Made by a program: the position numbers and the translations under genes. The notes beneath the pieces are model-generated. The model saw only the letters and a list, made by a program, of their open reading frames with translations. It searched no databases and was not told the origin of the DNA. A stretch of DNA of 64,000 nt from Macrostomum lignano (taxonomy: Eukaryota), in the NCBI GenBank assembly GCA_002269645.1, contig NIVC01002053.1, positions 1-64,000 of the forward strand. The letters run 5' to 3'. How positions within the stretch are numbered: position 1 is the stretch's first letter; each line of letters starts with the position of its first letter. Shown here in pieces: positions 3,391 to 60,700 of this stretch.

Positions 3391-3869
3391 TAAAAATCAA
3401 TGAAGGCAAGACGGAACAACCAGAGCTTGAATTAGCTCATTTGCCGTTCTATTTTTGTCAGTAAAAGAGACGAAGAAGTGTCGCATAGAGAGGAGGGAGT
3501 GGAATGTCACTCGCGCATGCTTGGAGCACCGCCGGGACCGATAAGAACAAGAAGAAACTGGCTGGAGTAGAGAAGATCGAGGGAAGGACGCCGAAGCAGC
3601 GCTGTTGTACATCTGAAATGCGTCCATTATTCACTAGCTATATGGACAGGTGTGCAATGCAACTCCGTCACCGCAGTCTATTCCGTCACTGTCTGCATAG
3701 CCATTGACTAATCCGGGCCATTGACAGCAGACTCTCCGCTCCCTCCCTGCACCGCCAAGCAGCAAGGCCTCCCCTCCGCGTACAAAAGCAGAGCCCAGTG
3801 CAAAGCGGCCCCGCACAAGCAGACACGCGGAACACCCGATTAACCCACAGACTTGCGAATCGCAGTGTA

Positions 3870-5329
3870 ATGCCAGCCGAAACCGAGGAGATTCCCGAGA
3901 TCGACATGTCGCAGCAGTCGGAGGCCGTGGTTGCTGAGCAGCTGGTGTCGGCGCTCACCACAGTCGGCTTCTGCTATGCGGTCGGCCACGGCGTCCCGCA
4001 GGAGACGGTGGCGTCCGCCTTCGCCGAGTCGGCCGGCTTCTTCGAGCGTCCGCTGTCCGAGAAGCTGCGGCACCGTCGCGACTGGCGCAAGTCGACCTGC
4101 GGCTACATCCCGCCTCACTGGGCCAGCACCAGCGACCCGGACGAGCCTCCCGTCGAGCGGTTCAGCCTTGACGCTCCGCCAGACGAGAAGGAGGTGCTGG
4201 ACGTGTGCCACACCTGTGACGACACCGTCTGGCCCTCGAAGTCGTTCCGGAAGGCTTCGCTGGACCTCATCAGCGCGGCTCAGGTAAGTTGAGTCTGACG
4301 CATCGGAATTGCAGCTTAAGCAGTGCACAGACCCTCAGACGTTTCTCACCTACTCTGCATCATTAAGTAGCTCAGAGCTGCTACCGACAATAACAAAAAT
4401 TTGCTGCTCAAAAGTCTGAACTTAAAACAGAGGAGCAGCGTCACAAGGCGCGCCTAAAACCGAGTGCGGGACGCCAGCGTCAGTCAGCCGACAATCGACA
4501 AAATGCTGAGTGCGGGTCTGTCTTCAATGCCGCTAGAGTGCCGGATTATGTGGACTCTATCGTCAAAAAAGAACTGTACCTACGTCTACTTTGTCACTTA
4601 CTTAGCTAGTCTGAGGGCCAGTCATACTCATTTCTTTTCAGCATCCAGCCGCTCATCACCTCAGTAACTCTTATTGACGCTCCCCGCAGGACCTGACGCT
4701 GCGCCTGATGCGTCTGATTGGCGGGGGCCTCGGCCTCAGCCCTCCTGACCAGCTGGCCGACGCCTTCGTGGGATTTCCCACGCCGGCGAACACAAGCCAG
4801 CTGCGCATGCTGCACTACCCGCCGCTGTCCACCGATACCAATGGGTCCGCCAGCGGCGACCGATGCGGAGAGCACACCGACTACGGTTGCATCACGCTGG
4901 TGTTCTGCGACTCGCAGCCCGGACTGCAGGTGAGCTTCCATGCTGCTTTACTTGTTCGACGCTTATTGTGTCTGAAACATTTGCCATTGTCCTCGTCAGG
5001 TGCTGTCCAGGACTGGTCGCTACCTTGACGCAAACCCGCGTCCTGGTCGCGTCCTGGTGAACATCGGCGACCTCATGCAGCGCTGGACTGGCGGTCGGCT
5101 GCACTCCGCCAGACACCGAGTGCTGGCACCGACTGACCCGAAGCTGCGCTCCCAGCCTCGCTACAGCCTGGTGTACTTCACGCACTGTGACGACGATTTC
5201 ACTGTCCGACCGTTGCTAGGAGACCCGGACAGCTTCCCGCCGGTGAAGACCGGTGAGCACATGCGCAGGCGCTTCGAAGAGACCTTCCAGCTGGGCCAGG
5301 GCATCGACCCGCAGCTGCCGCCGCTCTGA
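3870..5329 (+). CDS. 2OG-Fe(II) oxygenase, IPNS/DIOX_N-like, copy 2; intact, 327 aa (exons 3870-4283, 4690-4929, 5000-5329)
   Basis: Three in-phase exons. IPEIDM N-terminus, GFCYAVGHGV, LRMLHYPP, CGEHTDYG, VNIGDLMQRWT, HRV and RYS motifs typical of the family. Confidence 0.9.
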
Positions 5330-7095
5330 CCGAAGCGAACCACCTGATGAAGACAGGAGTTTCTGGTTGGTAGGCGGCATCCCTACCTGCTCTATATTTA
5401 ACCGTGGGTTCCGATCCAACCAAGACAATCAAATGCTGTGGGGCGTAAGGCTTGCAGATGGAGAACAATTGGTGAATTTATTTATTCTGAGTGCATTCAA
5501 AAATCTTGTCTAAAAATGCATATGAGCGTAGTTTAGATTTATCACTATTCTTAAGCGTTGCCTCCTAAAACAACCAAGAAGTGGCTCCCAAATTGGAGAC
5601 CCTCTTTGATTCATTGCAATTTTTGTCAACAATATTTACTCTTGCCAAATAAAATTGCACTTGATAATAATCAGACTCTGTTTACAATGCGTTCATTGTT
5701 CCAAATGCTATCAACATATTGCAGAACAAGCAATGTAAATAGCGGTCGTGCTAAAGCCAATCATAAATGATAAGAAATCTGGACAGGAAATGACAGAGGC
5801 CAATCTCTGAGCTGAAACAATGCAGTGATAATGGGGGTCTCGGCCTGCGTCTGCTCTGTTTCTGGCCAGCGGTTTTTGTCGCGTCGCAGATTAGCATTTC
5901 AGCGCTGATCTGATAATCATTAAAGCGAATGCATGCTGCTGAGTGCGAGGAGGACGCCGTGGCACAGCGGTATCGCATCGTTCTCTTATCCAGGAGGACC
6001 TGGACTCGATTCCTGGTGTAACTGAGTTAATTTTAAGGCAGTGATGGCTCTGGAGTCCTTAGCAGACTTTTAAACCTCAAGACACCGCTTGTACATCCTA
6101 GTTTACATCTGTACGAGTACACACCCAAGCTCAGATGAGGCAGCTCCATGGGAATTTCAAGCAAATGTTCAGTAATGTCAAAATTAACAATAAAAAAATC
6201 ATTTTCTTCTCTTCTCTTCATTTTTTCTTAAAATGTCGTTTTACGAACGGTACACATAAAAAACATAGAACGGCAGCTAAAATTTATTTATAAATGAGCT
6301 GACGCAGAAAAACTTGGATTTAAACGGGTAAAAAAGCAAACCACGAAGGAAGAACAGAGATAGCTGCTGCTACGAGATTCGGTTAACAACAATTAAAAGT
6401 ACATTGATTTATCACAGATAAGTTCAAGTAATTGGGAAGCGGGCTTAGTAGCTCAGGCTGCTAGTAGGCCTTTATTATTCTTGTATAAAATACATGTATG
6501 TAGTAATTATTGAGATAATAAAAATAGACGATACGCAGCTAAGGAGAGCAGTACGAACTATCTAAATTCACTAGCTAATATTTTATAGCAGGTATCATTG
6601 CCAAAACAAATAAATTACGCAAAAATTTTAAACATTTAGCAAACAGCGAACAGTGAGAATATGGACATGGGCGAGCCGTGCAAATTTCGTTGCAAGATTG
6701 AAAGTTTGCAGGTTTTTACTTCTTTATTGAAGATAAAACACCTTCTGGACTTCCGAATTGCCAATAAAGCAAGCATGCATTTTGTCCGTGAGATGCAGTC
6801 ACAAGTTTATCAAGCTGAAGTTTGAGCATTGGCGCTCTGCTATGAAACTTTTCTCTAGCTTTTTCCTCTATAAACTTGTGAGTGCGCCTCGGACATGTCC
6901 GGGAGTCAAGAAGGTGAGATATCGCAGTGCTAAAACCAGAAAAATTCCTTGTCTCGCCAATGCAGTTTGTGCAGAGAAAGCCGGTCTTTGGCAAAAAATT
7001 CAGGGTTTTTGAGTGCAGCATCAATCGATCTGGTGCAGTTGACATAAAGTGAGAACTGGGAGTTCACGGGCTGCCATAGAAAATTAGCGGTACCA

Positions 7096-7910
7096 ATTCA
7101 GGGAATCAGCTTTTCCTATAGTACTTTGTGTACTTGTAGGATCTGGGGAATCAGCGGTACCCATAGTAGTCCATGTACTTGTAGGAGCTGGGGAATCAGC
7201 GGTACCCATAGTAGTCCATGTACTTGTAGGAGCTGGGGAATCAGCGGTACCCATAGTAGTCCATGTACTTGTAGGAGCTGGGGAATCAGCGGTACCCATA
7301 GTAGTCCATGTACTTGTAGGAGCTGGGAAATCAGCGGTACCCATAGTAGTCCATGTACTTGTAGGAGCTGGGGAATCAGCGGTACCCATAGTAGTCCATG
7401 TATTTGTAGGAGCTGGGAAATCAGCGGTACCCATAGTAGTCCATGTACTTGTAGGAGCTGGGAAATCAGCGGTACCCATAGTAGTCCATGTACTTGTAGG
7501 AGCTGGGGAATCAGCGGTACCCATAGTAGTCCATGTATTTGTAGGAGCTGGGAAATCAGCGGTACCCATAGTAGTCCATGTACTTGTAGGAGCTGGGGAA
7601 TCAGCGGTACCCATAGTAGTCCATGTACTTGTAGGAGCTGGGGAATCAGCGGTACCCATAGTAGTCCATGTACTTGTAGGAGCTGGGGAATCAGCGGTAC
7701 CCATAGTAGTCCATGTACTTGTAGGAGCTGGGGAATCAGCGGTACCCATAGTAGTCCATGTACTTGTAGGAGCTGGGGAATCAGCGGTACCCATAGTAGT
7801 CCATGTATTTGTAGGAGCTGGGAAATCAGCGGTACCCATAGTAGTCCATGTACTTGTAGGAGCTGGGGAATCAGCGGTACCCATAGTAGTCCATGTACTT
7901 GTAGGAGCTG
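7096..7910. repeat. 45-bp tandem array (17 near-perfect units at 7141-7905 plus 1 degenerate unit) overlapping the CCDC181 stop codon
   Basis: Unit AGCTGGGGAATCAGCGGTACCCATAGTAGTCCATGTACTTGTAGG repeats with a 45-nt period. Confidence 0.95.
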
Positions 7911-10052
7911 GCTACAAGTAGAGCATTGGCCAGAGCCTGCGACTTCCTTGACCGGCGCATGGCCAGCTGGGTCACGCGGGCCCGCTGTCGCTCGCACATC
8001 TCCTCGTATAGTTTCTGCTCTTCCTTGCGACGGAGCCACCTGGCAGAGAATTAACGGGTTTTGAATGAGTACAGTCCATGGCTCTAAATGATTCAAATTT
8101 TTGTTCACAGCCAGCCGCTTGCGAGTAAGAAAGTGCAAACCAGGAAATTACCAGACAGCAAAAAGAAAATGCAGTTTTGTGCTTAGTTTTCTACACCAAA
8201 ATCACCCCACATTGACAACTCGTCACTGAAACCGATGCCAGCATTCTCTGCGTATTACGTATACTTGCGCTTAATTGAATTAAGAAACCAACTCTCTACT
8301 GTTAGTAGTCGCATTGAGTATTTCTTATCGATTTTGTCCTAAATAAAATTGAACGACGCATCCCTGAAGCTGGAGGCCGGGTAGGGTCTCCTTCAGAGAT
8401 CAATTATGCATTGGATTGAGGCACATATTTGAACTCATTGGTAGGCAAGCTAAAAAACTCTGTCAACAAGAATTAACGCGGCTCAGTGTTTCTAAGCTTC
8501 ACTAAGTGAATTTTAGCTGCAACCTGTCCAACATGGGCTGGCGGATCAAAGCTGGGTCAGTTACTCTCTGCTCTTGCACCTGTCACATTGGATTAAGGAT
8601 TAGCAAATGCTTGTTCTGGAAAGAATTTCGAAGTGCAATAAAATAAATTCACTTACAGCTTGAAAGCCCTCCGGCACTGCCTTGAAGTGCGCGTCTCAGA
8701 GTGCTCAATCATCTCCTCGCGCTCCATCTCTTGGTATTTCTTCTCCTTCTTCTGCTGCTTCCGCTTGCTCTGCAGCCAGTTTTCGAAGCTCGGCTTGCCA
8801 TTCCGCTGGCGCTCTTGCTGCTCCTGCTCTTCCTGCTGCCGCTGCCGCCGCTCCGCCTCTTGGCGCTCCTTCTCGTCTTTCTGCTGCTCACTTTTGGCGC
8901 GCAGCCAAGCATCAAAGCCGGCGCCATTGTCTTGGCGCTGCGCGCGCTCACGCGCTTCGGCCTCCTCGCGGCGCTCCCGGTCACGCCGCTCCCGCCGCTG
9001 CTGCTGCCGCTTGGCCCGCAGCCAGGCCTGGAATGCCAGCTCGTTGTCCCGCTCCCGCTCATCCTGGCAACCGTTGCTACGGGCGCTGCCCGGCCGGCCG
9101 TTGCCGTTGACGGACGAGCGGCCGTTTGAGTCGCGCCGTTGCTGCCGCGGCGCCGAGCCCGGCCGGCCGCGTGGACCGCCGCCACCGCCGCTCGGCTCCC
9201 CGTTGCTTTCGCTGTCGCGGCCGCTCAGCTCCAGATCTTCGTCGCTGTCGCTGTCGATTTGACCGGCTTCCACCTCCCGCCTATCGACGTACTTGTACTG
9301 GCCACCGTCGCTGACCAGCAGTACCTTCCCTGAGCCCGGCTGGTCGCCGCCGCCGTCCGTCTCCACTGGTTGCTGGCGATCCGGCGTCGATTTCTCAGCG
9401 TCGTCGCTGTCGGTCTCCGGCCGCTGCTCGGGTGGCGTCTGAGGCGGCGAATCGTCTGAATCGGCCTCGTCCTCGGCCGGTAGCTGCGTCGGTGGTGACG
9501 GCGACGGGGCGACCTGGACGAGCTCGGCGCTGAATCGAACCCGTGACGGCCTGGCCGCGGACTCCTCTGGCGACGGTTCGCGCTCCAGTTCGGCATTGAG
9601 CTGGTTGAGCCGGGCCAGGGTATCCTCGTAGTCGGGGCCGGGCTCTGCGGAGGGCACCGGTGGTCGATTTCGAAACGTATTTTTCAGGCCAATTAAATTC
9701 TCCAAAAACTGACTGCCCTCTACATCCAGCATGGAGTTCTTCAGCCTTATCTTCTGGAACTTTGAAGTTGCCTTGAAGCAAATTCAAGTAAATCGTATTT
9801 CAGCTCACCTTGCAAAGCCTTTAGAAATTCATCGTCGGCTTCCTCTGGAATTTTTATTTATTTAGGCATCAATAATCGCATCAAATCAAAGGAAATTTTG
9901 AAAGTAGGACACATAGAGGCAAAAAGAGAGCTTGACACACCAGTCCAATCATCAGCGCTGATTGTCTGCAGCCTGTCTAACTCCCCCATTGCTGCTAGCT
10001 GATCATCTCTCAGGCCGTACTCATCATGTTGTGGCTCATCCTGCTCAGTCAT
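7871..10052 (-). CDS. CCDC181: Coiled-coil domain-containing protein 181-like; main exon ~9646-8657, last exon 8039-7871; 5' exons (candidate ATG 10052) unresolved
   Basis: Recognised segments: LARLNQLNAEL...VRFSAELV, KVLLVSDGGQYKYV, ERDNELAFQAWLRAK, and repeated F-x-x-W-L-x-x-K motifs. Phase-2 GTAAGT donor at 8656 joins the acceptor at 8040, giving AFKLWLRRK...YYGYR*. Confidence 0.8.
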
Positions 10053-14049: not shown

Positions 14050-15150
14050 CTGGGATGGGTGATTCTGGGATGGGTGATTGTGGGATGGGCGATTCTGGGA
14101 TGGGTGATTCTGGGATGGGTGATTGGGGATGGGTGATTGGGGATGGGTGATTGGGGATGGGTGATTGTGGGATGGGTGATTGTGGGATGGGTGATTCTGG
14201 GATGGGCGATTCTGGGATGGGTGATTCTGGGATGGGTGATTGGGGATGGGTGATTGGGGATGGGTGATTGGGGATGGGTGATTGTGGGATGGGTGATTCT
14301 GGGATGGGTGATTCTGGGATGGTTGATTCTGGGATGGGTGATTGTGGGATGGGTGATTGTGGGATGGGTGATTGTGGGATGGGTGATTCTGGGATGGGTG
14401 ATTCTGGGATGGGTGATTGGGGATGGGTGATTGGGGATGGGTGATTGTGGGATGGGTGATTGTGGGATGGGTGATTGTGGGATGGGCGATTCTGGGATGG
14501 GTGATTGTGGGATGGGTGATTGTGGGATGGGTGATTGTGGGATGGGTGATTGTGGGATGGGTGATTGTGGGATGGGTGATTGTGGGATGGGTGATTCTGG
14601 GATGGGTGATTGTGGGATGGGTGATTCTGGGATGGGTGATTGTGGGATGGGTGATTCTGGGATGGGTGATTCTGGGATGGGTGATTGTGGGATGGGCGAT
14701 TCTGGGATGGGTGATTGTGGGATGGGCGATTCTGGGATGGGTGATTCTGGGATGGGTGATTCTGGGATGGGTGATTCTGGGATGGGTGATTGTGGGATGG
14801 GTTATTGGGGATGGGTGATTCTGGGATGGGTGATTGTGGGATGGGCGATTCTGGGATGGGTGATTCTGGGATGGGTGATTGTGGGATGGGCGATTCTGGG
14901 ATGGGTGATTCTGGGATGGGTGATTCTGGGATGGGTGATTCTGGGATGGGTGATTGTGGGATGGGTGATTGTGGGATGGGTTATTGGGGATGGGTGATTC
15001 TGGGATGGGTGATTGTGGGATGGGTGATTTTGGGATGGGTGATTGTGGGATGGGTGATTGTGGGATTGGTGATTGGGGATGGGTGATTGGGGATGGGTGA
15101 TTGGGGATGGGTGATTGTGGGATGGGTGATTGGGGGATGGGTGATTGGGG
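14050..15150. repeat. 15-bp G-rich minisatellite (GGGATGGGTGATT[C/G]T)
   Basis: Direct inspection. Confidence 0.95.
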
Positions 15151-15772
15151 GATGGACGATCGAATGACTGATATTTTTTGAAGCTTTGATGTGCGCCTTT
15201 GGTTTCCTTTATTGTTAATCTAGATGCCGCTAAAAAGATCTAATTTTAATAGAATATATTAATTGCTAGGAAATTATCATGATCATCACGTGACGAACCG
15301 CACCTCCTATGATCAGGATCAGGATCGCAGGTGAATTGGGCATCTATGGCAGACGCTATTCTCACTCATGTTTCAGATCTAACCAAAGCAGAACTTCCAT
15401 CAGCATAACCAACTCAAACACCCAAGCTGTGAGATCAGCTCACAGCTCATTTGCTCATCAGTTCTTTCGTTGCCAGCACTTCTCAATCGAGGAGCAGCCA
15501 ATCAGACGACTTGAGCTCTGCGATTCTGGGATTTGGGATTGGCTGGCAGTCCCGATGAAGACCTGAGCTCACAGCACAGCGAAAATCTCTTATTCAAATT
15601 GAAAGAGTACGGCTGTTCAGTCGCTAGTCCCGATTTTGACCAGCCAACGCTTTCCAGTCGCCCGAAACTCTTCTTCAGTGAGTGCATCGAAGCTTTTCAT
15701 TTCAGCTGCACAGGTGCGAGTGCTGAATACTTGTTGGAGTGTATGCCTGTTTGTACAGGACTGTTGGCTGCT

Positions 15773-16508
<736 letters not shown>

Positions 16509-16715
16509 GCCGCTCCTGCAGTGACAGGAACATAAACATTCATCTCCATTCTGTGCGGCAAAACAGCAAGCAGCAAACAGCTCAAGCTCATGAGGCTAAA
16601 ATTGGTCACGCATTTCTGCACACAAAAGGCTTTCTCTATTGATCAATACCGCTCCAGGAAATGATTAATACTGTATCTTGCTCTGTTTACCATCGCTGAT
16701 TCAACAGGCAAAGAG

Positions 16716-18120
16716 ATGCTCCGCAGACTGGAGACCACCGGCCTCATGCTTGCTGTCTGCTGCCTGTCGCTGCTCCTGGCTTCGAGCGGGCGCGTCGCCC
16801 TGGGCGAGGTGAGAAACACAATGACTTTCTGCGATCTGGAACTGCTGTAATGAGCTCTATTCGCATTCGCAGTCTGAATACATTCGCGCATCAATTGTGC
16901 ATTCGCTCTCCTTTGCAGGGGCGTAGCCAGGGGGCAAGGGCTGAGGGCGCGGTCCCTCCCCAATATGGCTGGCAAAGGTATATGGCGCCCCCTAGCAACA
17001 GCTTTGGCTTTGGGGGGGGGGGCTTTGGGAAGGGGCAGAGCAACTCAGCGGTAAAACGCGTCTGACTCTCGCGTCACAGACCTCTGGTTCGATTCCGTGT
17101 GCGGCTACTTTCATTTGAGGCTTGTGTGGCCCAGGGAGTTGTCGCACGATTCAAACCCACACGGCCAACTTCAAAAGCACAGAGACTGTACATGCCTGAG
17201 GATTAGAAAGTCAGGGCCGCTGTACACCCTGTGTGAGCGTGTATGAGTGCGTGCCTGCGTACAGTATTGGCGCGCTTGTATGATTGTGGGACGATGTCGC
17301 CGAAGACGTTGCGCCAGGGTAGCTGTGCCTACAGAGGTGCAGAATCTCCTTGAATGCGTCCCTCCTCTTTCGTGCTTGAACGGGACAATGAGAGCGGAGC
17401 AAATTGATTGTATGGGAATGTCATCAGCGTTCCGTATCTGCTTTCTCTCTTAGTAGTGTTCATTAGGAATATTACCGTCCTTAGCTATCATTGGGCTGCA
17501 ACAGGTCTAAGAATATTCTTTTTCGACTCATTCAGACCGCCGAATTCGACAACGACGGCGATGCACTGACCGAGTACCAGTTGATGCCAGATCGCGACGA
17601 ATTGCTGTCGGACGAGTTCAAAGACTACGACGACTGGTCGAAGAGGAACTTGGGGTCTGCTCTGCGCTTGCGCGGAAAGAGACACATGGGATCACCTTTC
17701 CGCTGGAGGGGTAAGAAGAACATGGGATCTGCCATGCGATTCCGCGGCAAGAAGAACATGGGATCTGCCATGCGATTCCGCGGCAAGAAGAACATGGGAT
17801 CTGCCATGCGATTCCGCGGCAAGAAGAACATGGGATCTGCCATGCGATTCCGCGGCAAGAAGAACATGGGATCTGCCATGCGATTCCGCGGCAAGAAGAA
17901 CATGGGATCTGCCATGCGATTCCGCGGCAAGAAGAACATGGGATCTGCCATGCGATTCCGCGGCAAGAAGAACATGGGATCTGTCATGCGATTCCGCGGC
18001 AAGAAGAACATGGGATCTGCCATGCGATTCCGCGGCAAGAAGAACATGGGATCTGCCATGCGATTCCGCGGCAAGAAGAACATGGGATCCGCCATGCGGT
18101 TTTATGACAAATATTATTAG
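16716..18120 (+). CDS. Neuropeptide prohormone, ~225 aa (exons 16716-16808 and 17536-18120), with 12 predicted amidated peptides
   Basis: Exon 1 is signal-peptide-like (MLRRLETTGLMLAVCCLSLLLASSGRVALGE) with a phase-0 GTGAGA donor. Exon 2 starts at TTCAG|ACC in phase 0 and has an acidic spacer, then KR-NLGSALRLRG-KR-HMGSPFRWRG-KK-(NMGS[A/V]MRFRG-KK)x10-NMGSAMRFYDKYY*. Confidence 0.9.
17032..17290 (+). mobile_element. tRNA-derived SINE-like repeat, family B, in the prohormone intron
   Basis: A-box-like CAACTCAGCGGTAAAACGCG and B-box GGTTCGATTCC (17086-17096). The body matches the reverse complement of 51951-52158. Confidence 0.65.
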
Positions 18121-19737: not shown

Positions 19738-20235
19738 TCAATGCTCAAGTGCTAGCAGTACGCACATCTGTGGGTGCACTATCACTCGCTCATACAGGTG
19801 CAAGCCGTTACATGAGCCAATGTACACAAAAGCCACCTGGCTGAACTCCTCAAGCCGGACGCCCTTGCTGCAGCGGTACCTGTCCCCATCCAGAGACTTC
19901 GGTTCTGCGGACAGGCAGACCCGGTCCGTGAAGCAGGGAGCGCCGCCAAGGCACGGCTTGCCCTCGAAGGTGAAGTTCTTCGTCTGAGCGAACGGGCACG
20001 GAGAGTCGCCGTCGCCCACAGGCGGTTCGATCACGCTTGCTGGGCCGCCTCGCAGCTCGGCCGGTGGGGCCAGAGAGAAAATCTGCTGGCCCGATGCCAG
20101 CTTGTCCTGCGACAGGCCGGGCACCGAGGCGCTGCACGACCTGAAGAGGTCGCCGGCTCCGAGGGGCGCTGCGAGAATGGGAGCGGGGAAAATCCAGAGG
20201 GCCAGCAGAGGGGAGATTAAGCAGAAAAACTGCAT
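19738..20235 (-). CDS. Secreted cysteine-rich protein of unknown family, 165-aa ORF (3' end may be spliced)
   Basis: Hydrophobic signal-peptide-like N-terminus MQFFCLISPLLALWIFPAPILA, 8 Cys in the mature part, GC-rich coding-like codons. Confidence 0.7.
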   Translation of the reverse strand: MQFFCLISPLLALWIFPAPILAAPLGAGDLFRSCSASVPGLSQDKLASGQQIFSLAPPAELRGGPASVIEPPVGDGDSPCPFAQTKNFTFEGKPCLGGAPCFTDRVCLSAEPKSLDGDRYRCSKGVRLEEFSQVAFVYIGSCNGLHLYERVIVHPQMCVLLALEH

Positions 20236-27568: not shown

Positions 27569-30500
27569 ATGTCTGCAGAATCAGCACCCGTGGAGCAGCC
27601 GGCCCCGTCAGAGGCGCCAGCCGAGGGGTCCAGTCGCAAACGAGCAAACGATGACCTGCTGACCCGAACTGGCGGGGCCTACATACCGCCAGCTAAACTG
27701 CGCGCAATGCAGGCCTCAATGTCCGACAAGTCTAGCGAGCAATACCAGCGGGTGGCCTGGGAGGCGCTTAAGAAAACTCTTAATAGCCTAATTAACATGA
27801 CTAATGTGACCAATCTGCCTAATATTGTTCGCCAATTACTATCGGAGAATCTGGTCAGAGGCCGGGGCTTGTTCATCCGGTCTCTGATGACCAATCAGGC
27901 CACCTCACCTGTGTTCACGCCCGTCTTTGCCGGCCTAGTGGCCGTTGTCAATACTAGATTTCCGCAGATTGGCGAACTAGCCTTGAAACGCCTCATACAG
28001 GAGTTGAAAAAGGCTTTTCGGCGAAACAATAAAGAGACTTGTTTGAATTCTTGCACTTTTCTGGCTCACCTCATCAACCAGCGAGTTGCTCACGAGGTTC
28101 TGGCTCTGGAAATTCTCGCCTTGCTGCTCAACAGGCCGACGGACGGCTCCGTTGAGATTGCAGTCGGCTTCCTTAAGGAGGTCGGCGCCAGACTGTTGGA
28201 GACTGCTCCAAGAGGACTGCGCATGATCTTCGATCAGCTGCGGGGCATCTTGCACGAGGCCGCGTTGGATAAGCGAGTCCAGTACATGATTGAGACTCTG
28301 TTTCAGGTGAGGCTCGCTGTGCATCAGTGCTACCTTGTCTTTTAGTACCTGTGATGGGTGATATTTAGTACCGGTTCTAGTACCTGTCCCGGTGTCTTTA
28401 TATTATAGGGGCGGGGTTCCGGTGTTACCTGTCTTTCACTACTGATACTATGGTATTTTTCTTTCATTCGATGCGACCATGCAACTCATCTTTTAGTACG
28501 CTCGTACCGGTGCTATTTATCTTCTAGTATCGGCTCTCTTTGTCTCAGCAATGGTGCCTTGAAACTTTTAGTTAAGTCGTGTCTTTTTGCACCGGTGTTG
28601 TCTGTCTTACCGGTTCTGAGTGTCTTCAGTCCCGATGCCACCTGTTTTTGATATAGGTAGCTGATTACACAGAATATCACACAGAATGCTCATTCGCACT
28701 CTCTGTATGACAGTCGCAGGGCAAAAAAGATACGCATTGAGCCTACTCTTGGGGTGAAGAAAGCAAGTCGTACAAACCATATAGACAATCTAAAAGTAGC
28801 CATCTAAACAAAATGTGCAATTATAGTATGAGACAAGTGTATGCAAAAATGAACAAGTTTGCATCGTATATATCATTTAAGTTATTATTATAATTCTGCC
28901 CTATTGTTATTACTATTGTAATGATATGTCAGTAGTGATTTCAGCATCAACTGTTTTTTAATTTCTAATCTCGCAGGTCCGCCAGGACGAGTTCAAGCAG
29001 TACCCATCAATCCAGGAGGCCCTAGACCTAGTGGAAGAGGAGGACCAGGTGACTCACCTGCTCAGTCTGGAGGATGAGCACGACACTGAGCAGGCGCTGA
29101 ATGTATTCCGCTACGATCCGGACTATCTCACCCACGAGGACGAATACAAGGCTATCCAACGGGAGCTGCTCGGCGACGGAGACGACAGTAGCAGCGACAG
29201 TGGCAGCGACAGCAGCGACGGCAGCGAAAGCGAAGACGACAACGAAGCCGGCGAAGGCGCAGATACGGAGGCGGCGGCGGCTAAGCCGGCCATCGACCAG
29301 ACCCAGGCCCAGCTAGTGCAGCTGCGCAAGACCATCTACCTGACTGTGCAGAGCAGCCTAGACTACGAGGAGGCGGCCCACAAGCTCCGGCGCATCCAGC
29401 TGCGGCCTGGCGAGGATGCCGAACTGGCCAGCATGATTCTGGACTGCTGCGCCCAGCTGCGCACCTACGAGAAATTCTACGGATTGATGGCGCAGAGATT
29501 CTGCCAATTAGACAGAGCCTACGTGCAGCACTATGAGAGGATCTTCACTGAGCAGTATAATACTATTCACAGGCTGGAGACGATGAAGCTGCGCAATGTG
29601 GCCAGATTCTTTGCTCACCTGTTGCACACTGACTCAATCTCGTGGGGCGTGATGCAGTGCGTGCAGCTCACTGAGCAGGGCACAACGTCTTCTAGTAGGA
29701 TATTTCTGAAGATCCTGTTCCAAGACCTGGCCGAGCACATGGGCTTGGAGAGGCTCTCCCAGCGCTTCGCCGACTGCACTCTGCAGGCATTCTTCGAGGG
29801 CCTGTTCCCGCGGGATCATCCGCGCAATACCCGCTTCTCGATTAACTACTTCAAGAGCATCGGCCTCAACGGAGTCACCCTGCCGCTGCGCCAGTGGTAC
29901 GAGACTGCGCCAAAGCCCAAGGCTGAGGAGTCTGATTCCTCGGAGTCTTCCTCTTCTAGTAGCAGTTCGTCTTCGTCATCGTCCTCTGATTCTGACTCAG
30001 ACTCGGATGATGAGGCGTCAGCTAGACGGAAGCGGAGTAGCGGACGGGCCAGCCGATCAATCAAGCAGGAGCCGAAAGAGGCTGCGGCACCTACTGATGA
30101 AGGCAGGCAGCGGCATGGGTAAGCTGTTAACTATATATCCCCACACTCATACAGAATGTGCAGCGGCCCGGACTTGTCCCCAATTCTGGTGTAAATCTTA
30201 TGGAAATATCCTTTACTTAGATTCAACTTTCGTTTTAGTTTTATCATTAGTACACTATTTAAAGTGCACTATTATAGGGGTTTTAGCCTAGTGGTTAGAG
30301 CGTCGGACTCATTACAAAGGTCGGGGTTCGATTCCCGATCCCAATCGAAACTATTTGTGTCCTTGAGCAAGACACTTAAATCTGCATTGCTTCAGTTCAC
30401 CCAGCTGTAAAATGGGTGCCAGCATTAGCTGGGGTAATTGAGGGGGTGTGTGGCGACCCCCCAGTCCTTGGACTGAACAGCCGTAGGCAGCCTTCAGATG

Positions 30501-31483: not shown

Positions 31484-32200
31484 TTGGTGCTGTCAGACAA
31501 GTCCATCGGGCCGGGCAAATGGTCCGACTACACCTGCGTGCTGCCCAGCGTGTCAGTCGGCAACGTTGGCCAGCTGGCTGCCGACCTGATCATCAGCTCC
31601 GGCCGGCTGTACTCGGTGGGCTACTGGCACAGCGCCTCGCTGACCCCGGTGTGCGGCCCCGGCCCGTTCGGCGGGCCGCCCTGCACAGCCGCCGAACTGT
31701 GGGAGAGTGAGCAGCGCCGCATCGTTGTACTGCAGCTGCGCTCTCCCGTGCTGGCCTGTCGAAGGCGGCGCTTCCTTGACGAGGCCTGCAGCCTCATCGC
31801 CGAGTGCGGCTTCGCCCGCGTGCTGCTGCTGGCCAGCGCATGGGACTCGTCTAGGCGGGAGCCCAGCTGCCCGTCGCTTGGCTTGGCCGGCTCGCCCGGT
31901 TGGCCGAATCCCGCACCAGAAGGTCTCGAGTTCGAGCCGCTAGAGCCGGAGCGTCGCCTCTCCGGCGTCGGCCTGGCCGGGCCGCTGTTCCGCCGGCTGG
32001 CCGCCGACTCGCGCCCGACTGGCACGGCTTTGGCCTGCCTGTTCTGCTCCGAGGGCGACAATTCCGGACACGCCGGACAGTTGGCCGAAGCTGCGGCCGC
32101 CATTCTCGGACAGCCGGGCCTGGCGCCGGTACCTGGACGGCCTCTGCCGTCGTCCTGGCGTCTGCTGTACGGCAGCCGGCCAGTCGAAGGCTTGTATTGA
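31484..32200 (+). CDS. PSMG2: Proteasome assembly chaperone 2 (PAC2); start codon not identified
   Basis: LPSVSVGNVGQLAADLIIS, VLQLRSP, FCSEGDN and PSSWRLLYG match the PAC2 family. The ORF starts with TTG right after an acceptor-like CCCGCCCGCAG. Confidence 0.9.
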   Translation: MVLSDKSIGPGKWSDYTCVLPSVSVGNVGQLAADLIISSGRLYSVGYWHSASLTPVCGPGPFGGPPCTAAELWESEQRRIVVLQLRSPVLACRRRRFLDEACSLIAECGFARVLLLASAWDSSRREPSCPSLGLAGSPGWPNPAPEGLEFEPLEPERRLSGVGLAGPLFRRLAADSRPTGTALACLFCSEGDNSGHAGQLAEAAAAILGQPGLAPVPGRPLPSSWRLLYGSRPVEGLY

Positions 32201-34430: not shown

Positions 34431-42804
<8,374 letters not shown>

Positions 42805-45196: not shown

Positions 45197-47468
<2,272 letters not shown>

Positions 47469-47744
47469 CGTGTCTGCAATTCCTAAAGTATTGGGGACCT
47501 GAATTTGAGTCTGGGAGCACAAATTCAATTAGTTCTGGAGCGGATTTTCTGGAGCGCTTCCTCACTCGGCAGGCACCCGGGGAGCAATCCTGCTGAGACC
47601 AATTAGACTGATGAGTCACTTGACAGGTTAATCCTTGAGCTAGTTGAATCGATCGAAATGGATGGATGGTCCTGTGGAATTATTGTCAACTGCTGATTCA
47701 ATATGATTCTCTGAGGGCTGCTTTGGACACAAAAATGCGTCGTT

Positions 47745-52463: not shown

Positions 52464-56398
<3,935 letters not shown>

Positions 56399-57754: not shown

Positions 57755-60700
57755 TCAAATCTGTGCCTCCAGCAGTTTGTACCAGCCCTGCACCGAGCGG
57801 CCGCCTCCAGCGTCACCCGCGCAGTCGTCCACGCAGATGACGGCCTCGCCAAGCCGCCGCCTACCCGGGCCTTTGATCTCGCCGCCGCCCAGCTCGGAGC
57901 TCGCCGAAACCTTCCCAGACAGCAGAGTGGCCTGAAGGAGCAGCAGGCCGCTCGTGGCCGACCTCGCCGCCGCCAACTGTTGACTGTCGAACTCCATCGT
58001 CTCGGCGAAATCTACACCGCTCAGACCGAGCCGCTGGGCCCGGGTTCGACGCCTGGCCCGCGCAGTGCCCAGAAGCGACAGCTCGCAGCAGCAGTGCAGC
58101 CCGGCGGCTGCTGCTACCAAGTTGCGGCACTGGCGCGGCGTCACTCGCAGGCGGCCGCCGTCGTTAGACTCGGCGCTCAAGCGGAGGTCCAGGAAGAGCT
58201 CGCCGGAGACCAGCTGGTCGTCTGGCAGGTCGCCTGGTTGAGGTGGCGGCGGTGGCGGATCGTGAGGAAATTCCCTGACGTGTACATGATTAATTGTGGG
58301 TAAGCCTTCTAAATATACTAAATCTCTAAGGTTTGTATGCTTGCTTGCTTGAATGTCCATAACGCTCTAGAGATTGCAATTCTTCACTTAGTACTAAATT
58401 GGGAAGGTCTTACTCCTCATGAACTTCCAAGTTGTTAATCTTTGCTTCTTTCTAATTTATTTTGGAGAAATGGCATCCTAGGGAGCTTTGAGGGTCAATT
58501 GGGATTAGTGGGAGAAATGGCATCCTAGGGATCTTTGAGGGTCAATTGGGATTAGTGGGAGAAATGGCATCCTAGGGATCTCTGCAGGCCCATTGGGATT
58601 AGTGGGAGAAATGGCATCCTAGGGATCTTTGAGGGTCAATTGGGATTAGTGGGAGAAATGGCATCCTAGGGATCTTTGAGGGTCAATTGGGATTAGTGGG
58701 AGAAATGGCATCCTAGGGATCTTTGAGGGTCAATTGGGATTAGTGGGAGAAATGGCATCCTAGGGATTTCTGCAGGCCCATTGGGATTAGTGGGAGAAAT
58801 GGCATCCTAGGGATCTCTGCAGGCCCATTGGGATTAGTGTGAGAAATGGCAACCTAGTGATCTCTGCAGATCCGGTGCAAAGTGCTCACCGCCTCTCTCG
58901 GTGCGCGTCGCCTCGCCGATGAGCAGCAGCTGGCCGGGTCCGAGCCACCGCCTGACTGACTCTCGCTGCTCCTCGGACAGGAAGTCCGTGTTCACCGTGG
59001 AGCAGCTGCTGTCGGACTGGCTTGCCGCTGTGCCGCATCCGCCCAGACTCCACTGCTGTTGCTCTGCAAAAGTTCACAGAGTGACTGTCCGATCGCCGCT
59101 CTCACGAGCTCACAACGTCACTATTTTGGCTCTCAGCATTTGATGGACGGGAAATTTGAACTGTCAAGAAGGCTCATTCAAGATGATAGAATTTCGATGC
59201 TGAAAATCTGACGGGCTCCTCACCAAGTGCACTGGGTCCTCGCCCGCCGCCAACGCCGCAGTTCTGTCTGAGTTTTGGTGGGGCCTCTGCAATTTATCCG
59301 GCGGGAAGGCGGCAACTGTCTGCGGCTTAGGGATAAAAGCCACTACTACGGAAGGATAAGGATATTCGTGAGGAATAGAAGGATATCTAGATACCAGGGC
59401 TGATAGGTTACAGCTGTCATATTGCTTGTCCCAAAGTCGCAAACAGCAAATTTAAGTGACGCATTTGCGGCAGCCGCTCCGCAACAAATAATAACCACAG
59501 CAAAACAACGGCAGAGGAGGCAAGCAACGCAAAGCATCAGTCAGTAACTTAGCTGACCGAACCTTCAATTCAAAGCATTTGAGGGACAGTTCTGCAATGC
59601 ACCGCATGCAGAATATTGGTCAGAAAGAAAATAAAAAGAAAATTTTTTGAGGCAATATTGCACACTTCAATAGTAAAATTTTTCCTGTTTGTCTTGACTG
59701 CTGCGTCAAATTTTCCTGTTAAGTTAAGTACAGCACTCTCTTCAATCTTTAGTCACTTGCTCCGTGATCCTTCAGTGACCTCTGCTACCCTCCCAGATCC
59801 TCCAGTGACCTCCGTTGCCCTCCCAGATCCTTCAGTGACCTCCGCTGTCCTTTCAGATCCTTCAGTGGCCTCCGCTGCCCTCCCAGATTCTTCAGTGACC
59901 TCCGCTGTCCTCCCAGATCCTTCAGTGACCTTTGCTGCCCTTCCAGATCCCTTAGTGACCTCCGCTGTCCTCTCAGATCCTTCAGTGACCTCCGCTGTCC
60001 TTTCAGATCCTTCAATGGCCTCCGCTGCCCTCCCAGATTCTTCAGTGACCTCCGCAGCCCTCCCAGATTCTTCATTGACCTTCGCTGCCCTCCCAACTCC
60101 CTCAGTGACCTCTGCTGTCCTCTCAGATCCTTCAGTGACCTCTGCTGTCCTCTCAGATCCATCAGTGACCTCTGCTGTCCTCTTAGATCCTTCAGTGACC
60201 TCTGCTGTCCTCTCAGATCCTTCAGTGACCTCAGCTGTCCTCTCAGATCCTTCAGTGACCTCTGCTGTCCTCTCAGATCCATCAGTGACCTCTGCTGTCC
60301 TCTCAGATCCATCAGTGACCTCTGCTGTCCTCCCAGATCCTTCAGTGACCTCCGCTGTCCATCTCAGATTCTTCAGTGACCTCCGCTGTCCTCCCAGATC
60401 CATCAGTGACCTCTGCTGACCTGCCAGATCCTTCAGTGACCTCTGCTGTCCTCTCAAATCCATCAGTGACCTCCGCTACCCTCACAGGTTCTTCAGTGAC
60501 CTCCGCTGTCTTCCCAGATCCTTCAGTGACCTCTGCTGTCCTTTCAGATCCATCAGTGACCTCTGCTGTCCTCCCAGATTCTTCAGTGACCTCCGCTGTC
60601 CTCTCAGATCCTTAAGTGTCCTCCGCTTACGTCTCCCAAGGTCAGGTAAGGTCAGCAAAGAGATGCCAAGAATCCCAGAAGCAGATGCGGCAGTCTCATG

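What the first reader, a model, noticed from the sequence alone, without database searches (positions are those of the whole stretch)
16716..18120. Candidate novel neuropeptide system: GSxxRxR-amide prohormone
Seen: a signal-peptide exon missed by the ORF track splices in phase to an exon with an acidic pro-region and 12 peptides flanked by KR/KK and ending in Gly: NLGSALRLR-G, HMGSPFRWR-G, 9x NMGSAMRFR-G and 1x NMGSVMRFR-G, plus a non-amidated tail NMGSAMRFYDKYY. Known: prohormone convertase, carboxypeptidase E and PAM would yield C-terminal Arg-amide peptides. They do not fit the invertebrate tachykinin FxGxR-amide motif, and the extra Arg stops them being RF-amides. Inference: the GSxxRF and LRLR cores recall molluscan LFRFamide (GSLFRFa) and sNPF (SPSLRLRFa), so this may be a derived sNPF/LFRFa-type ligand or a new family with its own GPCR. 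I do not recognise it as a named family.
Basis: partly seen in the sequence, partly recalled or inferred. Interest (0 to 1): 0.8.

Follow-up and report, generated by a model that had tools for sequence, protein, structure and literature searches.

The report
Flatworm HIGA-type neuropeptide precursor gene
This is a real two-exon gene of the flatworm Macrostomum lignano encoding a secreted precursor of 13 short peptides, but it belongs to the already named spiralian "HIGA" neuropeptide family rather than a new family, so it mainly extends that family to flatworms.

Summary
A 31-aa signal-peptide exon (16716-16808) splices in phase 0 to a peptide exon (17536-18120). The 225-aa product has an acidic pro-region, 12 Gly-terminated peptides flanked by KR/KK, and a non-Gly tail. 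The window is Macrostomum lignano genome.

The peptides are not an unnamed family and are not sNPF/LFRFamide-like. Their conserved part is the N-terminus, [N/H/Y][M/L]GSA[M/L]R directly after the dibasic site. That is the signature of the HIGA proneuropeptides described in Platynereis (2013) and nemerteans (2021).

On a matrix trained only on annelid and nemertean HIGA units, the flatworm units score 14.6-21.6 bits. The training set's own range is 14.4-28.1, and the best of 718 null peptides scores -0.5. BLASTP against Lineus HIGA gives 5e-12.

In M. lignano paralogues the residue before KK/KR is G, S, A or F, so amidation is optional in the family. Paralogues share the intron position and show pN/pS of about 0.08.

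Public gene models already contain the gene under misleading automatic names. I found no report of HIGA in flatworms. Verdict: new member of a known kind, of moderate-to-low interest. A side lead is that HIGA may be related to arthropod NPLP1.

The parts
15575..15713 (+). Putative 5' non-coding exon. The 3' end at CACAG|GTGCGA is firm in the models; the 5' end is approximate.
   Evidence: The public gene models P0001 and P0126 read ...FHFSCTG|KEMLRR... across this junction. This comes from gene models only and was not verified with transcripts. P0126 is a chimeric model.
15714..16707 (+). Putative 5'-UTR intron containing the (ACAG)n microsatellite at 15776-16509
   Evidence: GT at 15714 and AG at 16706-16707. 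TRF reports period 4 with 184 copies.
16716..16808 (+). Coding part of the signal-peptide exon (31 aa). The exon probably starts at 16708. The likely signal cleavage is ...VALG|E or ...ASSG|R.
   Evidence: ATG at 16716 and donor GAG|GTGAGA. The hydrophobic core MLAVCCLSLLL has a KD mean of 2.83. The paralogues have the same exon plan.
16809..17535 (+). Phase-0 intron of 727 nt (89 nt in the paralogues)
   Evidence: GT...AG boundaries with a polypyrimidine tract. The intron position directly after the signal peptide is conserved in L001 and L002.
17536..17640 (+). Acidic pro-region TAEFDNDGDALTEYQLMPDRDELLSDEFKDYDDWS
   Evidence: 35 aa with 13 D/E and 2 K/R.
17641..17718 (+). Two diverged HIGA-type units: KR-NLGSALRLRG and KR-HMGSPFRWRG-KK
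   Evidence: They score 20.0 and 14.6 bits on the HIGA-only PSSM.
17719..18078 (+). Ten 36-nt tandem units encoding NMGSAMRFRG-KK (9 copies) and NMGSVMRFRG-KK (1 copy)
   Evidence: TRF reports 99% identity. The units score 20.4 and 16.2 bits on the HIGA PSSM. Together with the other three units at 17647, 17683 and 18079, these are the only places in the six-frame window scoring at least 8 bits.
18079..18120 (+). C-terminal non-Gly unit NMGSAMRFYDKYY plus the stop codon
   Evidence: It scores 14.8 bits on the HIGA PSSM. The paralogues end in a comparable Tyr-rich tail, YLGSAMRFRSTARYNGPYRY.

Best explanation
The locus is a Macrostomum lignano gene for a HIGA-family proneuropeptide. HIGA is a multi-copy peptide family previously described in annelids and nemerteans.

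Shown here:
- The two-exon coding structure.
- Family membership by the N-terminal peptide motif.
- Purifying selection on the paralogues.

Inferred mechanism:
1. The precursor enters the secretory pathway through its signal peptide.
2. Prohormone convertases cut after each KR/KK, and a carboxypeptidase E-type enzyme removes the basic residues.
3. In this gene, where all 12 units end in Gly, peptidylglycine alpha-amidating enzymes yield NMGSAMRFR-NH2 (9 copies), NMGSVMRFR-NH2, NLGSALRLR-NH2 and HMGSPFRWR-NH2.
4. A free-acid tail peptide, NMGSAMRFYDKYY, is also released.

Across flatworm paralogues, nemerteans and Platynereis, the conserved feature is the N-terminal [H/N/Y][L/I/M]G[S/A]A[M/L][R/K/N] core next to the cleavage site. 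The receptor-recognition determinant is therefore most likely N-terminal. C-terminal amidation would then be a dispensable modifier affecting stability or potency.

The receptor is unknown. The ten near-identical units reflect a recent tandem expansion that raises the dose of one peptide.
For: Organism and gene:
- All close hits are M. lignano.
- The same splice junction appears in P0001 and P0126.
- The paralogues P0002, P0003 and P0127 share the exon plan and show pN/pS of about 0.08.

Family membership:
- The curated HIGA list contains KK-NLGSAMRWKGG-KR, KK-HLGSALRMRQG-KR, KR-HLGSAMRLG-KK and KR-HLGSAMKFG-KR.
- Platynereis HIGA contains KR-HIGAAMRLRPSKFED-KR, and HIGA peptides there were confirmed by MS.
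- On a PSSM trained only on nemertean and Platynereis units, the window units score 14.6-21.6 bits. The training set's self range is 14.4-28.1.
- 718 null peptides have mean -17.3 and maximum -0.5. Only 107 of 260,000 residue shuffles reach the real score.
- BLASTP of the window protein against Lineus longissimus HIGA gives 5e-12.
- The exhaustive profile search of 1.84 billion proteins recovered a further HIGA-type precursor, P0055.
- P0055 also aligns with the non-repeat peptide of the paralogues. HLGAAVRFGGERRWRYSWPNWYQRQG-KR-YLGSAMRFR aligns with HLGSALNMRFGGWRYRQGES-KR-HLGAALKFR, at 2e-9 to 2e-8.

Amidation: Conzelmann 2013 lists HIGA among pNPs with amidated peptides. Gly-K[KR] ends are frequent in nemertean HIGA.
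Against: - No transcript, in situ or peptidomic evidence was available, so neuronal expression and the final products are inferred.
- The family signal rests on a short motif of about 7-9 residues, although it is repeated and sits in the same position relative to cleavage sites. Convergence cannot be formally excluded.
- The flatworm precursors lack two features of other HIGA precursors. They have no acidic spacers between units and no long N-terminal peptides of the nemertean kind (HLGSLARHNWLPKPAIRYYPF...).
- In the paralogues most units end in S, A or F rather than G. Amidation is therefore not a conserved requirement, and the Gly in this gene's ten recent copies counts as one event.
- A unit-profile search of the 5.8-billion-protein collection returned nothing, not even the M. 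lignano proteins. It is uninformative.
- The flatworm npp catalogues of McVeigh 2009 and Koziol 2016 could not be read.
Confidence: 0.8

Rival explanations
1. One reading: a derived sNPF / LFRFamide-type ligand, or a wholly new family, in which the C-terminal ...R[FL]R-amide is the pharmacophore acting on an sNPF/PrRP-type GPCR.
For: There is a superficial likeness. GSxxRF resembles GSLFRFamide, and SALRLR resembles sNPF ...SLRLRFamide (both recalled from memory). Each paralogue has one unit ending ...AMRLRF. All 12 units of the window gene end in Gly.
Against: - No unit has the defining C-terminal RF/RW-amide. The ...RLRF unit is followed directly by KR with no Gly.
- The C-terminal residue varies between G, S, A and F among paralogues, while the N-terminus is invariant. 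That is the opposite of RFamide-type families.
- The N-terminal motif places the units within the HIGA range.
- 'New family' is contradicted.
Confidence: 0.07
2. The gene is a flatworm orthologue of arthropod NPLP1 (neuropeptide-like precursor 1). On this reading HIGA and NPLP1 are one protostome-wide family, and this gene should be filed under NPLP1.
For: - The M. lignano profile retrieved two NPLP1-like precursors from 1.84 billion proteins. P0059 (Oratosquilla) scored E 4.8e-7, and P0083 scored 1.6e-5 with units NIGSARRFTG-KR and NLGSARNFLYDG-KR.
- P0059 matches Tribolium NPLP1 at 1e-6.
- Nemertean HIGA N-terminal peptides score 14.7-21.5 bits on an insect-only NPLP1 PSSM.
- Those peptides align in the same order with P0059, as ...SLARxNWLP... 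followed by KR-[FY]LGSL[LA]R.G.
Against: - M. lignano units reach only 1.3-9.2 bits on the NPLP1 PSSM, whose self range is 13.1-24.1.
- The hallmark NPLP1 peptides (SLATLAKNxxLP, HIGALARLGWLP) are absent from the flatworm precursors.
- The pairwise E-values involve repetitive, compositionally similar precursors.
- No paper in the held library makes this link.
Confidence: 0.35
3. The gene is not a neuropeptide gene. It would be a secreted repetitive product of non-neural gland cells (for example adhesive, prostate/seminal or antimicrobial cationic peptides), or a non-functional ORF created by a coding-like minisatellite.
For: - There are no expression data.
- The predicted peptides are strongly cationic, with net charge about +3.
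- The window is extremely rich in micro- and minisatellites that create long spurious ORFs.
- The ten units are 99% identical, so they carry no independent evidence of constraint.
Against: - Strict dibasic framing of every unit.
- A conserved signal-peptide exon and intron in three paralogous loci.
- pN/pS of about 0.08 in non-repeat parts.
- Homology to a family whose peptides were detected by MS in Platynereis and which was curated as a proneuropeptide.
- Nine-residue peptides are short for membrane-active antimicrobial peptides (general knowledge).
Confidence: 0.08

Closest known systems
HIGA proneuropeptide family (Platynereis dumerilii HIGA, GenBank KF515947, Conzelmann et al. 2013; nemertean HIGA entries in Thiel et al. 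2021, Suppl. Material 1)
   Same: - A secreted multi-copy precursor.
- Each peptide starts directly after KR/KK with [H/N/Y/F][L/I/M]G[S/A][A/L][M/L][R/K/N].
- The C-terminal parts vary, and some end in Gly-K[KR] (amidated).
- Near-identical units exist, for example nemertean KK-NLGSAMRWKGG-KR and KK-HLGSALRMRQG-KR, and Platynereis KR-HIGAAMRLRPS...
- Flatworm units fall within the family's own PSSM range.
   Different: - Position 1 is mostly Asn or Tyr rather than His.
- Units abut with no acidic spacers, on a fixed 12-residue period.
- The peptides are only 9 residues long and end in Arg-amide (...R[FLW]R-NH2).
- The precursor is small (225 aa against more than 400-1200 aa) and lacks the long N-terminal peptides seen in nemerteans.
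- It comes from a phylum, Platyhelminthes, for which I found no HIGA report.
Arthropod NPLP1 (neuropeptide-like precursor 1; e.g. Drosophila NP_611993, Tribolium GLEAN_06787)
   Same: - A multi-copy precursor whose peptides are conserved at the N-terminus next to the dibasic site (N[IVL][GA][ST][LV]AR...).
- The C-termini are variable and only sometimes amidated.
- Some arthropod units (NIGSARRFTG, NLGSARNFLYDG, HIGSLLRG) are close to the flatworm and HIGA units.
   Different: - The core is ...[ST]LAR rather than ...SAM[RK].
- The flatworm units score below the NPLP1 self range.
- Hallmark NPLP1 peptides are missing.
- One NPLP1 peptide (VQQ) is associated with a membrane guanylate cyclase receptor. 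Nothing is known for HIGA.
sNPF / molluscan LFRFamide and FMRFamide-like peptides
   Same: Short basic peptides from multi-copy precursors that contain R[FL] near the C-terminus.
   Different: The defining C-terminal RF(W)-amide is absent because an extra Arg follows it, or there is no Gly. Conservation lies at the N-terminus, not the C-terminus.
Lingula anatina 'PedalPeptide-3' (XP_013414106.1; KR-YGSVFRLPxG-KR)
   Same: The same 12-residue period and a GSxxR[FLM] string. It was retrieved by the profile search.
   Different: The register relative to the cleavage site differs. It scores -19 to -24 bits on the HIGA PSSM. Thiel 2021 curated it as pedal peptide 3. The similarity is spurious.

Membership tests
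HIGA proneuropeptides | Several peptides per precursor, each beginning immediately after a dibasic site with [H/N/Y/F][L/I/M]G[S/A][A/L][M/L][R/K/N] | tested here: met
   All 13 units score 14.6-21.6 bits on a PSSM trained without flatworm sequences. The self range is 14.4-28.1 and the null maximum is -0.5. BLASTP against Lineus HIGA gives 5e-12.
HIGA proneuropeptides | Secretory precursor with an N-terminal signal peptide | tested here: met
   There is a hydrophobic core at residues 11-21 (KD 2.83), a basic n-region, and small residues at -3/-1 (VALG|E). This is a heuristic only because SignalP was not available.
HIGA proneuropeptides | Variable C-terminal halves, with a subset of units Gly-extended for amidation | tested here: met
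   The window gene has 12 of 13 units ending in Gly. The paralogues mix G, S, A and F, as the nemertean and Platynereis precursors do.
HIGA proneuropeptides | Acidic spacer peptides between units, and long N-terminal peptides (nemertean HLGSLARHNWLP... type) | tested here: not met
   Units abut directly as ...G-KK-N..., and only one acidic pro-region precedes the array. This looks like a typical feature rather than a defining one. Some adjacent nemertean units also abut, as in HLGSAMKFG-KR-HLGSALNY.
HIGA proneuropeptides | Expression in neurons and detection of the processed peptides | not testable with these tools
   No expression or MS data for M. lignano were accessible.
sNPF / LFRFamide | C-terminal ...RLRF/W-amide or ...LFRF-amide, conserved among copies | tested here: not met
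   The units end in ...R[FLW]R-Gly. The only ...RLRF unit, in the paralogues, lacks Gly. The terminal residue varies between G, S, A and F.
sNPF / LFRFamide | Activation of an sNPF/PrRP-type GPCR | not testable with these tools
   This requires a receptor assay.
Arthropod NPLP1 | Units with an N[IVL][GA][ST][LV]AR core | tested here: inconclusive
   Flatworm units score 1.3-9.2 bits on an insect NPLP1 PSSM. The self range is 13.1-24.1, the null mean is -14.3, and 0.14% of null peptides reach 5 bits.
Arthropod NPLP1 | Presence of the hallmark peptides SLATLAKNxxLP and HIGALARLGWLP | tested here: not met
   They are absent from the window protein and the paralogues. They are present in the insect references.
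Tachykinin, FMRFamide/FLP, NPFF, allatostatin-A, myomodulin (the database auto-names and obvious look-alikes) | C-terminal FxGxR-amide, RF-amide, PQRF-amide, Y/FxFGL-amide or MLRL-amide respectively | tested here: not met
   None of these C-termini occurs in any unit. No Pfam family reaches threshold. The UniProt names 'Allatostatin-A' and 'Pro-FMRFamide-related neuropeptide FF' are automatic labels.

The most novel reading that the evidence does not exclude
Spiralian HIGA, including this flatworm gene, and arthropod NPLP1 are one ancient protostome peptide family recognised through an N-terminal pharmacophore. On this reading, the spacer-free 9-residue M. lignano peptides would represent its minimal active core. 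That would make the still-orphan receptor directly testable in a transgenic flatworm model. Candidate receptor classes are an orphan GPCR, a membrane guanylate cyclase as reported for NPLP1-VQQ, or a peptide-gated channel.
Probability: 0.3. Interest if true: 0.55.

Novelty: new member of a known kind. Interest (0 to 1): 0.3.

Why it matters
HIGA was first thought to be specific to Platynereis and was then found in nemerteans. Thiel et al. 2021 did not find it in brachiopods or phoronids.

A clear member in Macrostomorpha, an early-branching flatworm lineage, extends the family to Platyhelminthes. That would be consistent with an origin predating the divergence of these phyla, with losses in some lineages.

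The flatworm paralogues also offer a natural experiment. The N-terminal core is invariant while the amidation signal comes and goes, which suggests where the pharmacophore lies in an orphan family.

In practice, the finding corrects misleading automatic names in public M. lignano annotation. It also supplies exact masses and probe regions for validation in a genetically tractable flatworm. It does not reveal a new kind of signalling system.

Tried and rejected
- **Literature string searches.** RFRamide, MRFRamide, RLRamide, RFR-NH2, GSAMR and similar terms found no relevant paper.
- **Flatworm neuropeptide catalogues.** McVeigh 2009, McVeigh 2012 and Koziol 2016 are not held. I therefore cannot exclude that the gene has an 'npp-' name there. 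The supplements of a Taenia npp paper and of the polyclad larval atlas hold no HIGA-like strings, but those files are small or incomplete.
- **Pfam.** There was no significant family for the window protein or the paralogues.
- **Exhaustive profile search.** About 115 of 122 hits were unrelated proteins with 12-residue periodicity (LGSSLSLRSFAR-type repeats and similar), and I rejected them on inspection. Lingula PedalPeptide-3 was rejected by PSSM.
- **Artificial four-unit profile against 5.8 billion proteins.** This returned nothing, not even the M. lignano proteins. I treat it as a technical failure, probably from repeat or bias correction, and not as evidence.
- **Search with P0055.** It found only two further unnamed HIGA-like proteins, so the taxonomic distribution in public protein sets remains poorly sampled.
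- **tRNA and Rfam scans of the window, including the intron.** Both were negative.
- **Antisense ORF 17625-18095 (156 aa).** I rejected it as a mirror artefact of the repeat array.
Full report
**Observation**

- An ATG at 16716 opens a 31-codon exon, MLRRLETTGLMLAVCCLSLLLASSGRVALGE, ending at a GAG|GTGAGA donor.
- After a 727-nt intron, the acceptor ttcattcag|ACC opens exon 2 (17536-18120) in the same phase.
- The 225-aa product has a hydrophobic signal-like N-terminus and a 35-aa pro-region with 13 acidic residues.
- The peptide units are KR-NLGSALRLRG, KR-HMGSPFRWRG, nine copies of KK-NMGSAMRFRG and one KK-NMGSVMRFRG.
- The tail is NMGSAMRFYDKYY.
- The last ten units form a 36-nt tandem array that is 99% identical.

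**Organism and gene reality**

The only close relatives among 5.8 billion clustered proteins are from the free-living flatworm Macrostomum lignano.
- P0001 and P0126 (UniProt A0A1I8IIH1 and A0A1I8IBN3) are earlier gene models of this same precursor.
- Both models use the same ...VALGE|TAEFD... junction.
- They are extended upstream through a further junction...FHFSCTG|KEMLRR. That junction implies a 5' non-coding exon ending at 15713 and an intron containing the (ACAG)n microsatellite.
- P0126 is chimeric and frameshifted. Both models carry automatic names ('Allatostatin-A', 'Pro-FMRFamide-related neuropeptide FF') that no sequence feature supports.

Paralogues P0002, P0003 and P0127 lie on other contigs of assembly GCA_002269645.1.
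- They have the same plan: a signal-peptide exon ending ...VIAE|gtgagt, an 89-nt phase-0 intron, then a peptide exon.
- Outside the repeats, two paralogous loci differ at 11 synonymous and only 3 non-synonymous positions (pN/pS about 0.08).
- These are therefore constrained coding genes and not ORFs thrown up by a minisatellite, a real risk in this repeat-rich window.

**What the paralogues say about the peptides**

The paralogue units read YLGSAMRLRS-KK, NMGSAMRLRA-KK, NMGSAMRLRS-KK, NMGSAMRFRG-KK, NMGSAMRLRF-KR, HLGAAVRFGG... and similar.
- The N-terminal x[ML]GSA[ML]R is invariant.
- The residue before the dibasic site is G, S, A or F.
- The conserved determinant is therefore N-terminal, and the amidation signal is optional.

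**Identification of the family**

An exhaustive HMMER profile search of 1.84 billion representatives returned mostly unrelated 12-periodic repeat proteins. It also returned a few true multi-copy peptide precursors.

Following these into the literature led to two curated sources:
- The proneuropeptide list of Thiel et al. 2021 (PMC8557429) has a family headed 'HIGA', with 13 nemertean entries. Examples are KK-NLGSAMRWKGG-KR, KK-HLGSALRMRQG-KR, KR-HLGSAMRLG-KK, KR-HLGSAMKFG-KR and KR-FLGSAMRYRQRQ....
- The family was named in Platynereis (Conzelmann et al. 2013, PMC3890597, GenBank KF515947). There the units include KR-HIGAAMRLRPSKFED-KR and KR-HLGAAMRLVQPK..., four peptides were confirmed by mass spectrometry, and amidated members are noted.

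I tested the resemblance at the unit level, using a 9-residue position-specific matrix trained only on 35 nemertean and Platynereis units:

| Set scored | Result (bits) |
|---|---|
| Training set, self range | 14.4-28.1 |
| NMGSAMRFR | 20.4 |
| NLGSALRLR | 20.0 |
| NMGSVMRFR | 16.2 |
| NMGSAMRFY | 14.8 |
| HMGSPFRWR | 14.6 |
| Paralogue units (one exception, HVGTPWRWS at -1.0) | 15-21.6 |
| 718 post-dibasic 9-mers from the unrelated hits | mean -17.3, maximum -0.5 |
| Lingula 'PedalPeptide-3' units | about -20 |

- In the six-frame translation of the whole window, only the 13 units exceed 8 bits.
- Residue shuffles reach the real score in 107 of 260,000 trials.
- BLASTP of the window protein against Lineus longissimus HIGA gives 5e-12, with every aligned block anchored on KR/KK plus xLGSAM.
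- P0055 is a HIGA-type precursor from an ENA eukaryotic contig, and its locus continues into a second ORF full of KR-HLGSAMKFGHW... units.
- P0055 also aligns with the non-repeat C-terminal peptides of the flatworm paralogues. HLGAAVRFGGERRWRYSWPNWYQRQG-KR-YLGSAMRFR aligns with HLGSALNMRFGGWRYRQGES-KR-HLGAALKFR.

I conclude with about 0.8 confidence that the locus is a HIGA-family gene.

**How it most likely works**

All of the following is inferred from standard prohormone processing and from the anatomy:
1. The signal peptide is removed.
2. Convertases cleave after KR/KK.
3. A carboxypeptidase trims the basic residues.
4. The Gly-extended units of this gene are amidated to NMGSAMRFR-NH2 (9 copies), NMGSVMRFR-NH2, NLGSALRLR-NH2 and HMGSPFRWR-NH2, and a free-acid tail peptide is released.

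Internal cleavage at ...RFR|G is unlikely because there is no basic residue at P4, P6 or P8 (general knowledge of monobasic sites).

The pattern of conservation points to an N-terminal pharmacophore. The receptor is unknown; I found no receptor assignment for HIGA in the papers read.

**Differences from described HIGA precursors**

- Position 1 is Asn or Tyr rather than His.
- There are no acidic spacers, and the period is a strict 12 residues.
- The peptides are very short and end in Arg-amide.
- The precursor is small and lacks the long N-terminal peptides of nemerteans.
- I found no report of HIGA in flatworms. The term occurs only in the two papers above, and it is absent from the polyclad atlas and a 2026 flatworm review.
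- The main flatworm catalogues, McVeigh 2009 and Koziol 2016, could not be read.

**A side lead: HIGA and NPLP1**

- The M. lignano profile also retrieved NPLP1-like arthropod precursors (P0059 from Oratosquilla, and P0083). Their units include HIGSLLRG, NIGSARRFTG and NLGSARNFLYDG.
- P0059 matches Tribolium NPLP1 at 1e-6.
- Nemertean HIGA N-terminal peptides (HLGSLARHNWLP..., YLGSLLRSG...) score within the insect NPLP1 range on an NPLP1-only matrix.
- Those peptides align in order with P0059.
- The flatworm units themselves are only intermediate on that matrix, at 1.3-9.2 bits against a self range of 13.1-24.1.
- HIGA and NPLP1 may therefore be one protostome family. This is a lead and not a result.

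**Context**

The neighbouring genes are ordinary:
- a DIOX_N dioxygenase
- a CCDC34-like gene
- a CWC22-like gene with MIF4G and MA3 domains
- a PAC2 proteasome chaperone

No RNA genes were found.

**Verdict**

The locus is a real candidate neuropeptide gene with correctly predicted processing, but it is not a new family and not sNPF-like.
- Novelty: new member of a known kind (HIGA), apparently the first recognised in Platyhelminthes.
- Interest: 0.3.

Noticed in passing
Supplement of PMC8557429 (HIGA entries); P0059; P0083 (L003 149-1330): Spiralian HIGA and arthropod NPLP1 look related. Nemertean HLGSLARHNWLP... and YLGSLLRSG... peptides score 14.7-21.5 bits on an insect-only NPLP1 matrix. 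They align in the same order with an Oratosquilla NPLP1-like precursor that itself carries many HIGSLLRG units. Neither HIGA paper mentions NPLP1.
   Followed up: partly
P0126 (UniProt A0A1I8IBN3), P0001 (A0A1I8IIH1), P0128 (A0A1I8IP29): The public M. lignano gene models that contain these precursors are chimeric or frameshifted. The N-terminus of P0126 is the + strand antisense of the CCDC34-like gene at window 8653-9732. The models carry misleading automatic names (Allatostatin-A, Pro-FMRFamide-related neuropeptide FF, RabBD domain-containing).
   Followed up: partly
L004 3001-6698 (ENA ERZ25767047, contig ctg38672): A very large HIGA-type precursor of more than 1200 aa is split into two called genes. 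It has dozens of alternating KR-HLGSAMKFGHWNNEND and KR-HMGAALAAG-KR units. The source organism was not identified.
   Followed up: no
window 15776-16509; also 7084-8138, 14431-15155, 37867-39549, 39809-40767, 41180-41734, 42000-42513, 45813-47619, 52464-54590, 59616-60463: The window has an unusually dense set of micro- and minisatellites, including (ACAG)n, a 15-nt unit and GA-rich tracts. They generate long spurious ORFs on both strands. One (ACAG)184 array sits inside the putative 5'-UTR intron of the peptide gene.
   Followed up: no
window 17030-17100 (inside the coding intron): This stretch looks tRNA-like to the eye (ggttcgattcc...) and may be a tRNA-derived SINE fragment. ARAGORN and Rfam find nothing.
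   Followed up: partly
window 3798-4292 (+), 8653-9732 (-), 27569-30122 (+), 31484-32200 (+): The neighbouring ORFs match DIOX_N (non-haem dioxygenase), CCDC34-like, CWC22-like (MIF4G + MA3) and PAC2 (proteasome assembly chaperone). ORFs at 326-838 and 3840-4328 (-) are near-duplicates, suggesting a local duplication of about 3.5 kb.
   Followed up: partly
window 19738-20235 (-): A 165-aa ORF just downstream of the peptide gene has a signal-peptide-like N-terminus (MQFFCLISPLLALWIFPAPILA...) and several Cys residues. It has no Pfam match.
   Followed up: no
window 17625-18095 (-): A 156-aa antisense ORF (MADPMFFLPRNR repeats) mirrors the peptide array. It is most likely an artefact of the repeat.
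   Followed up: no
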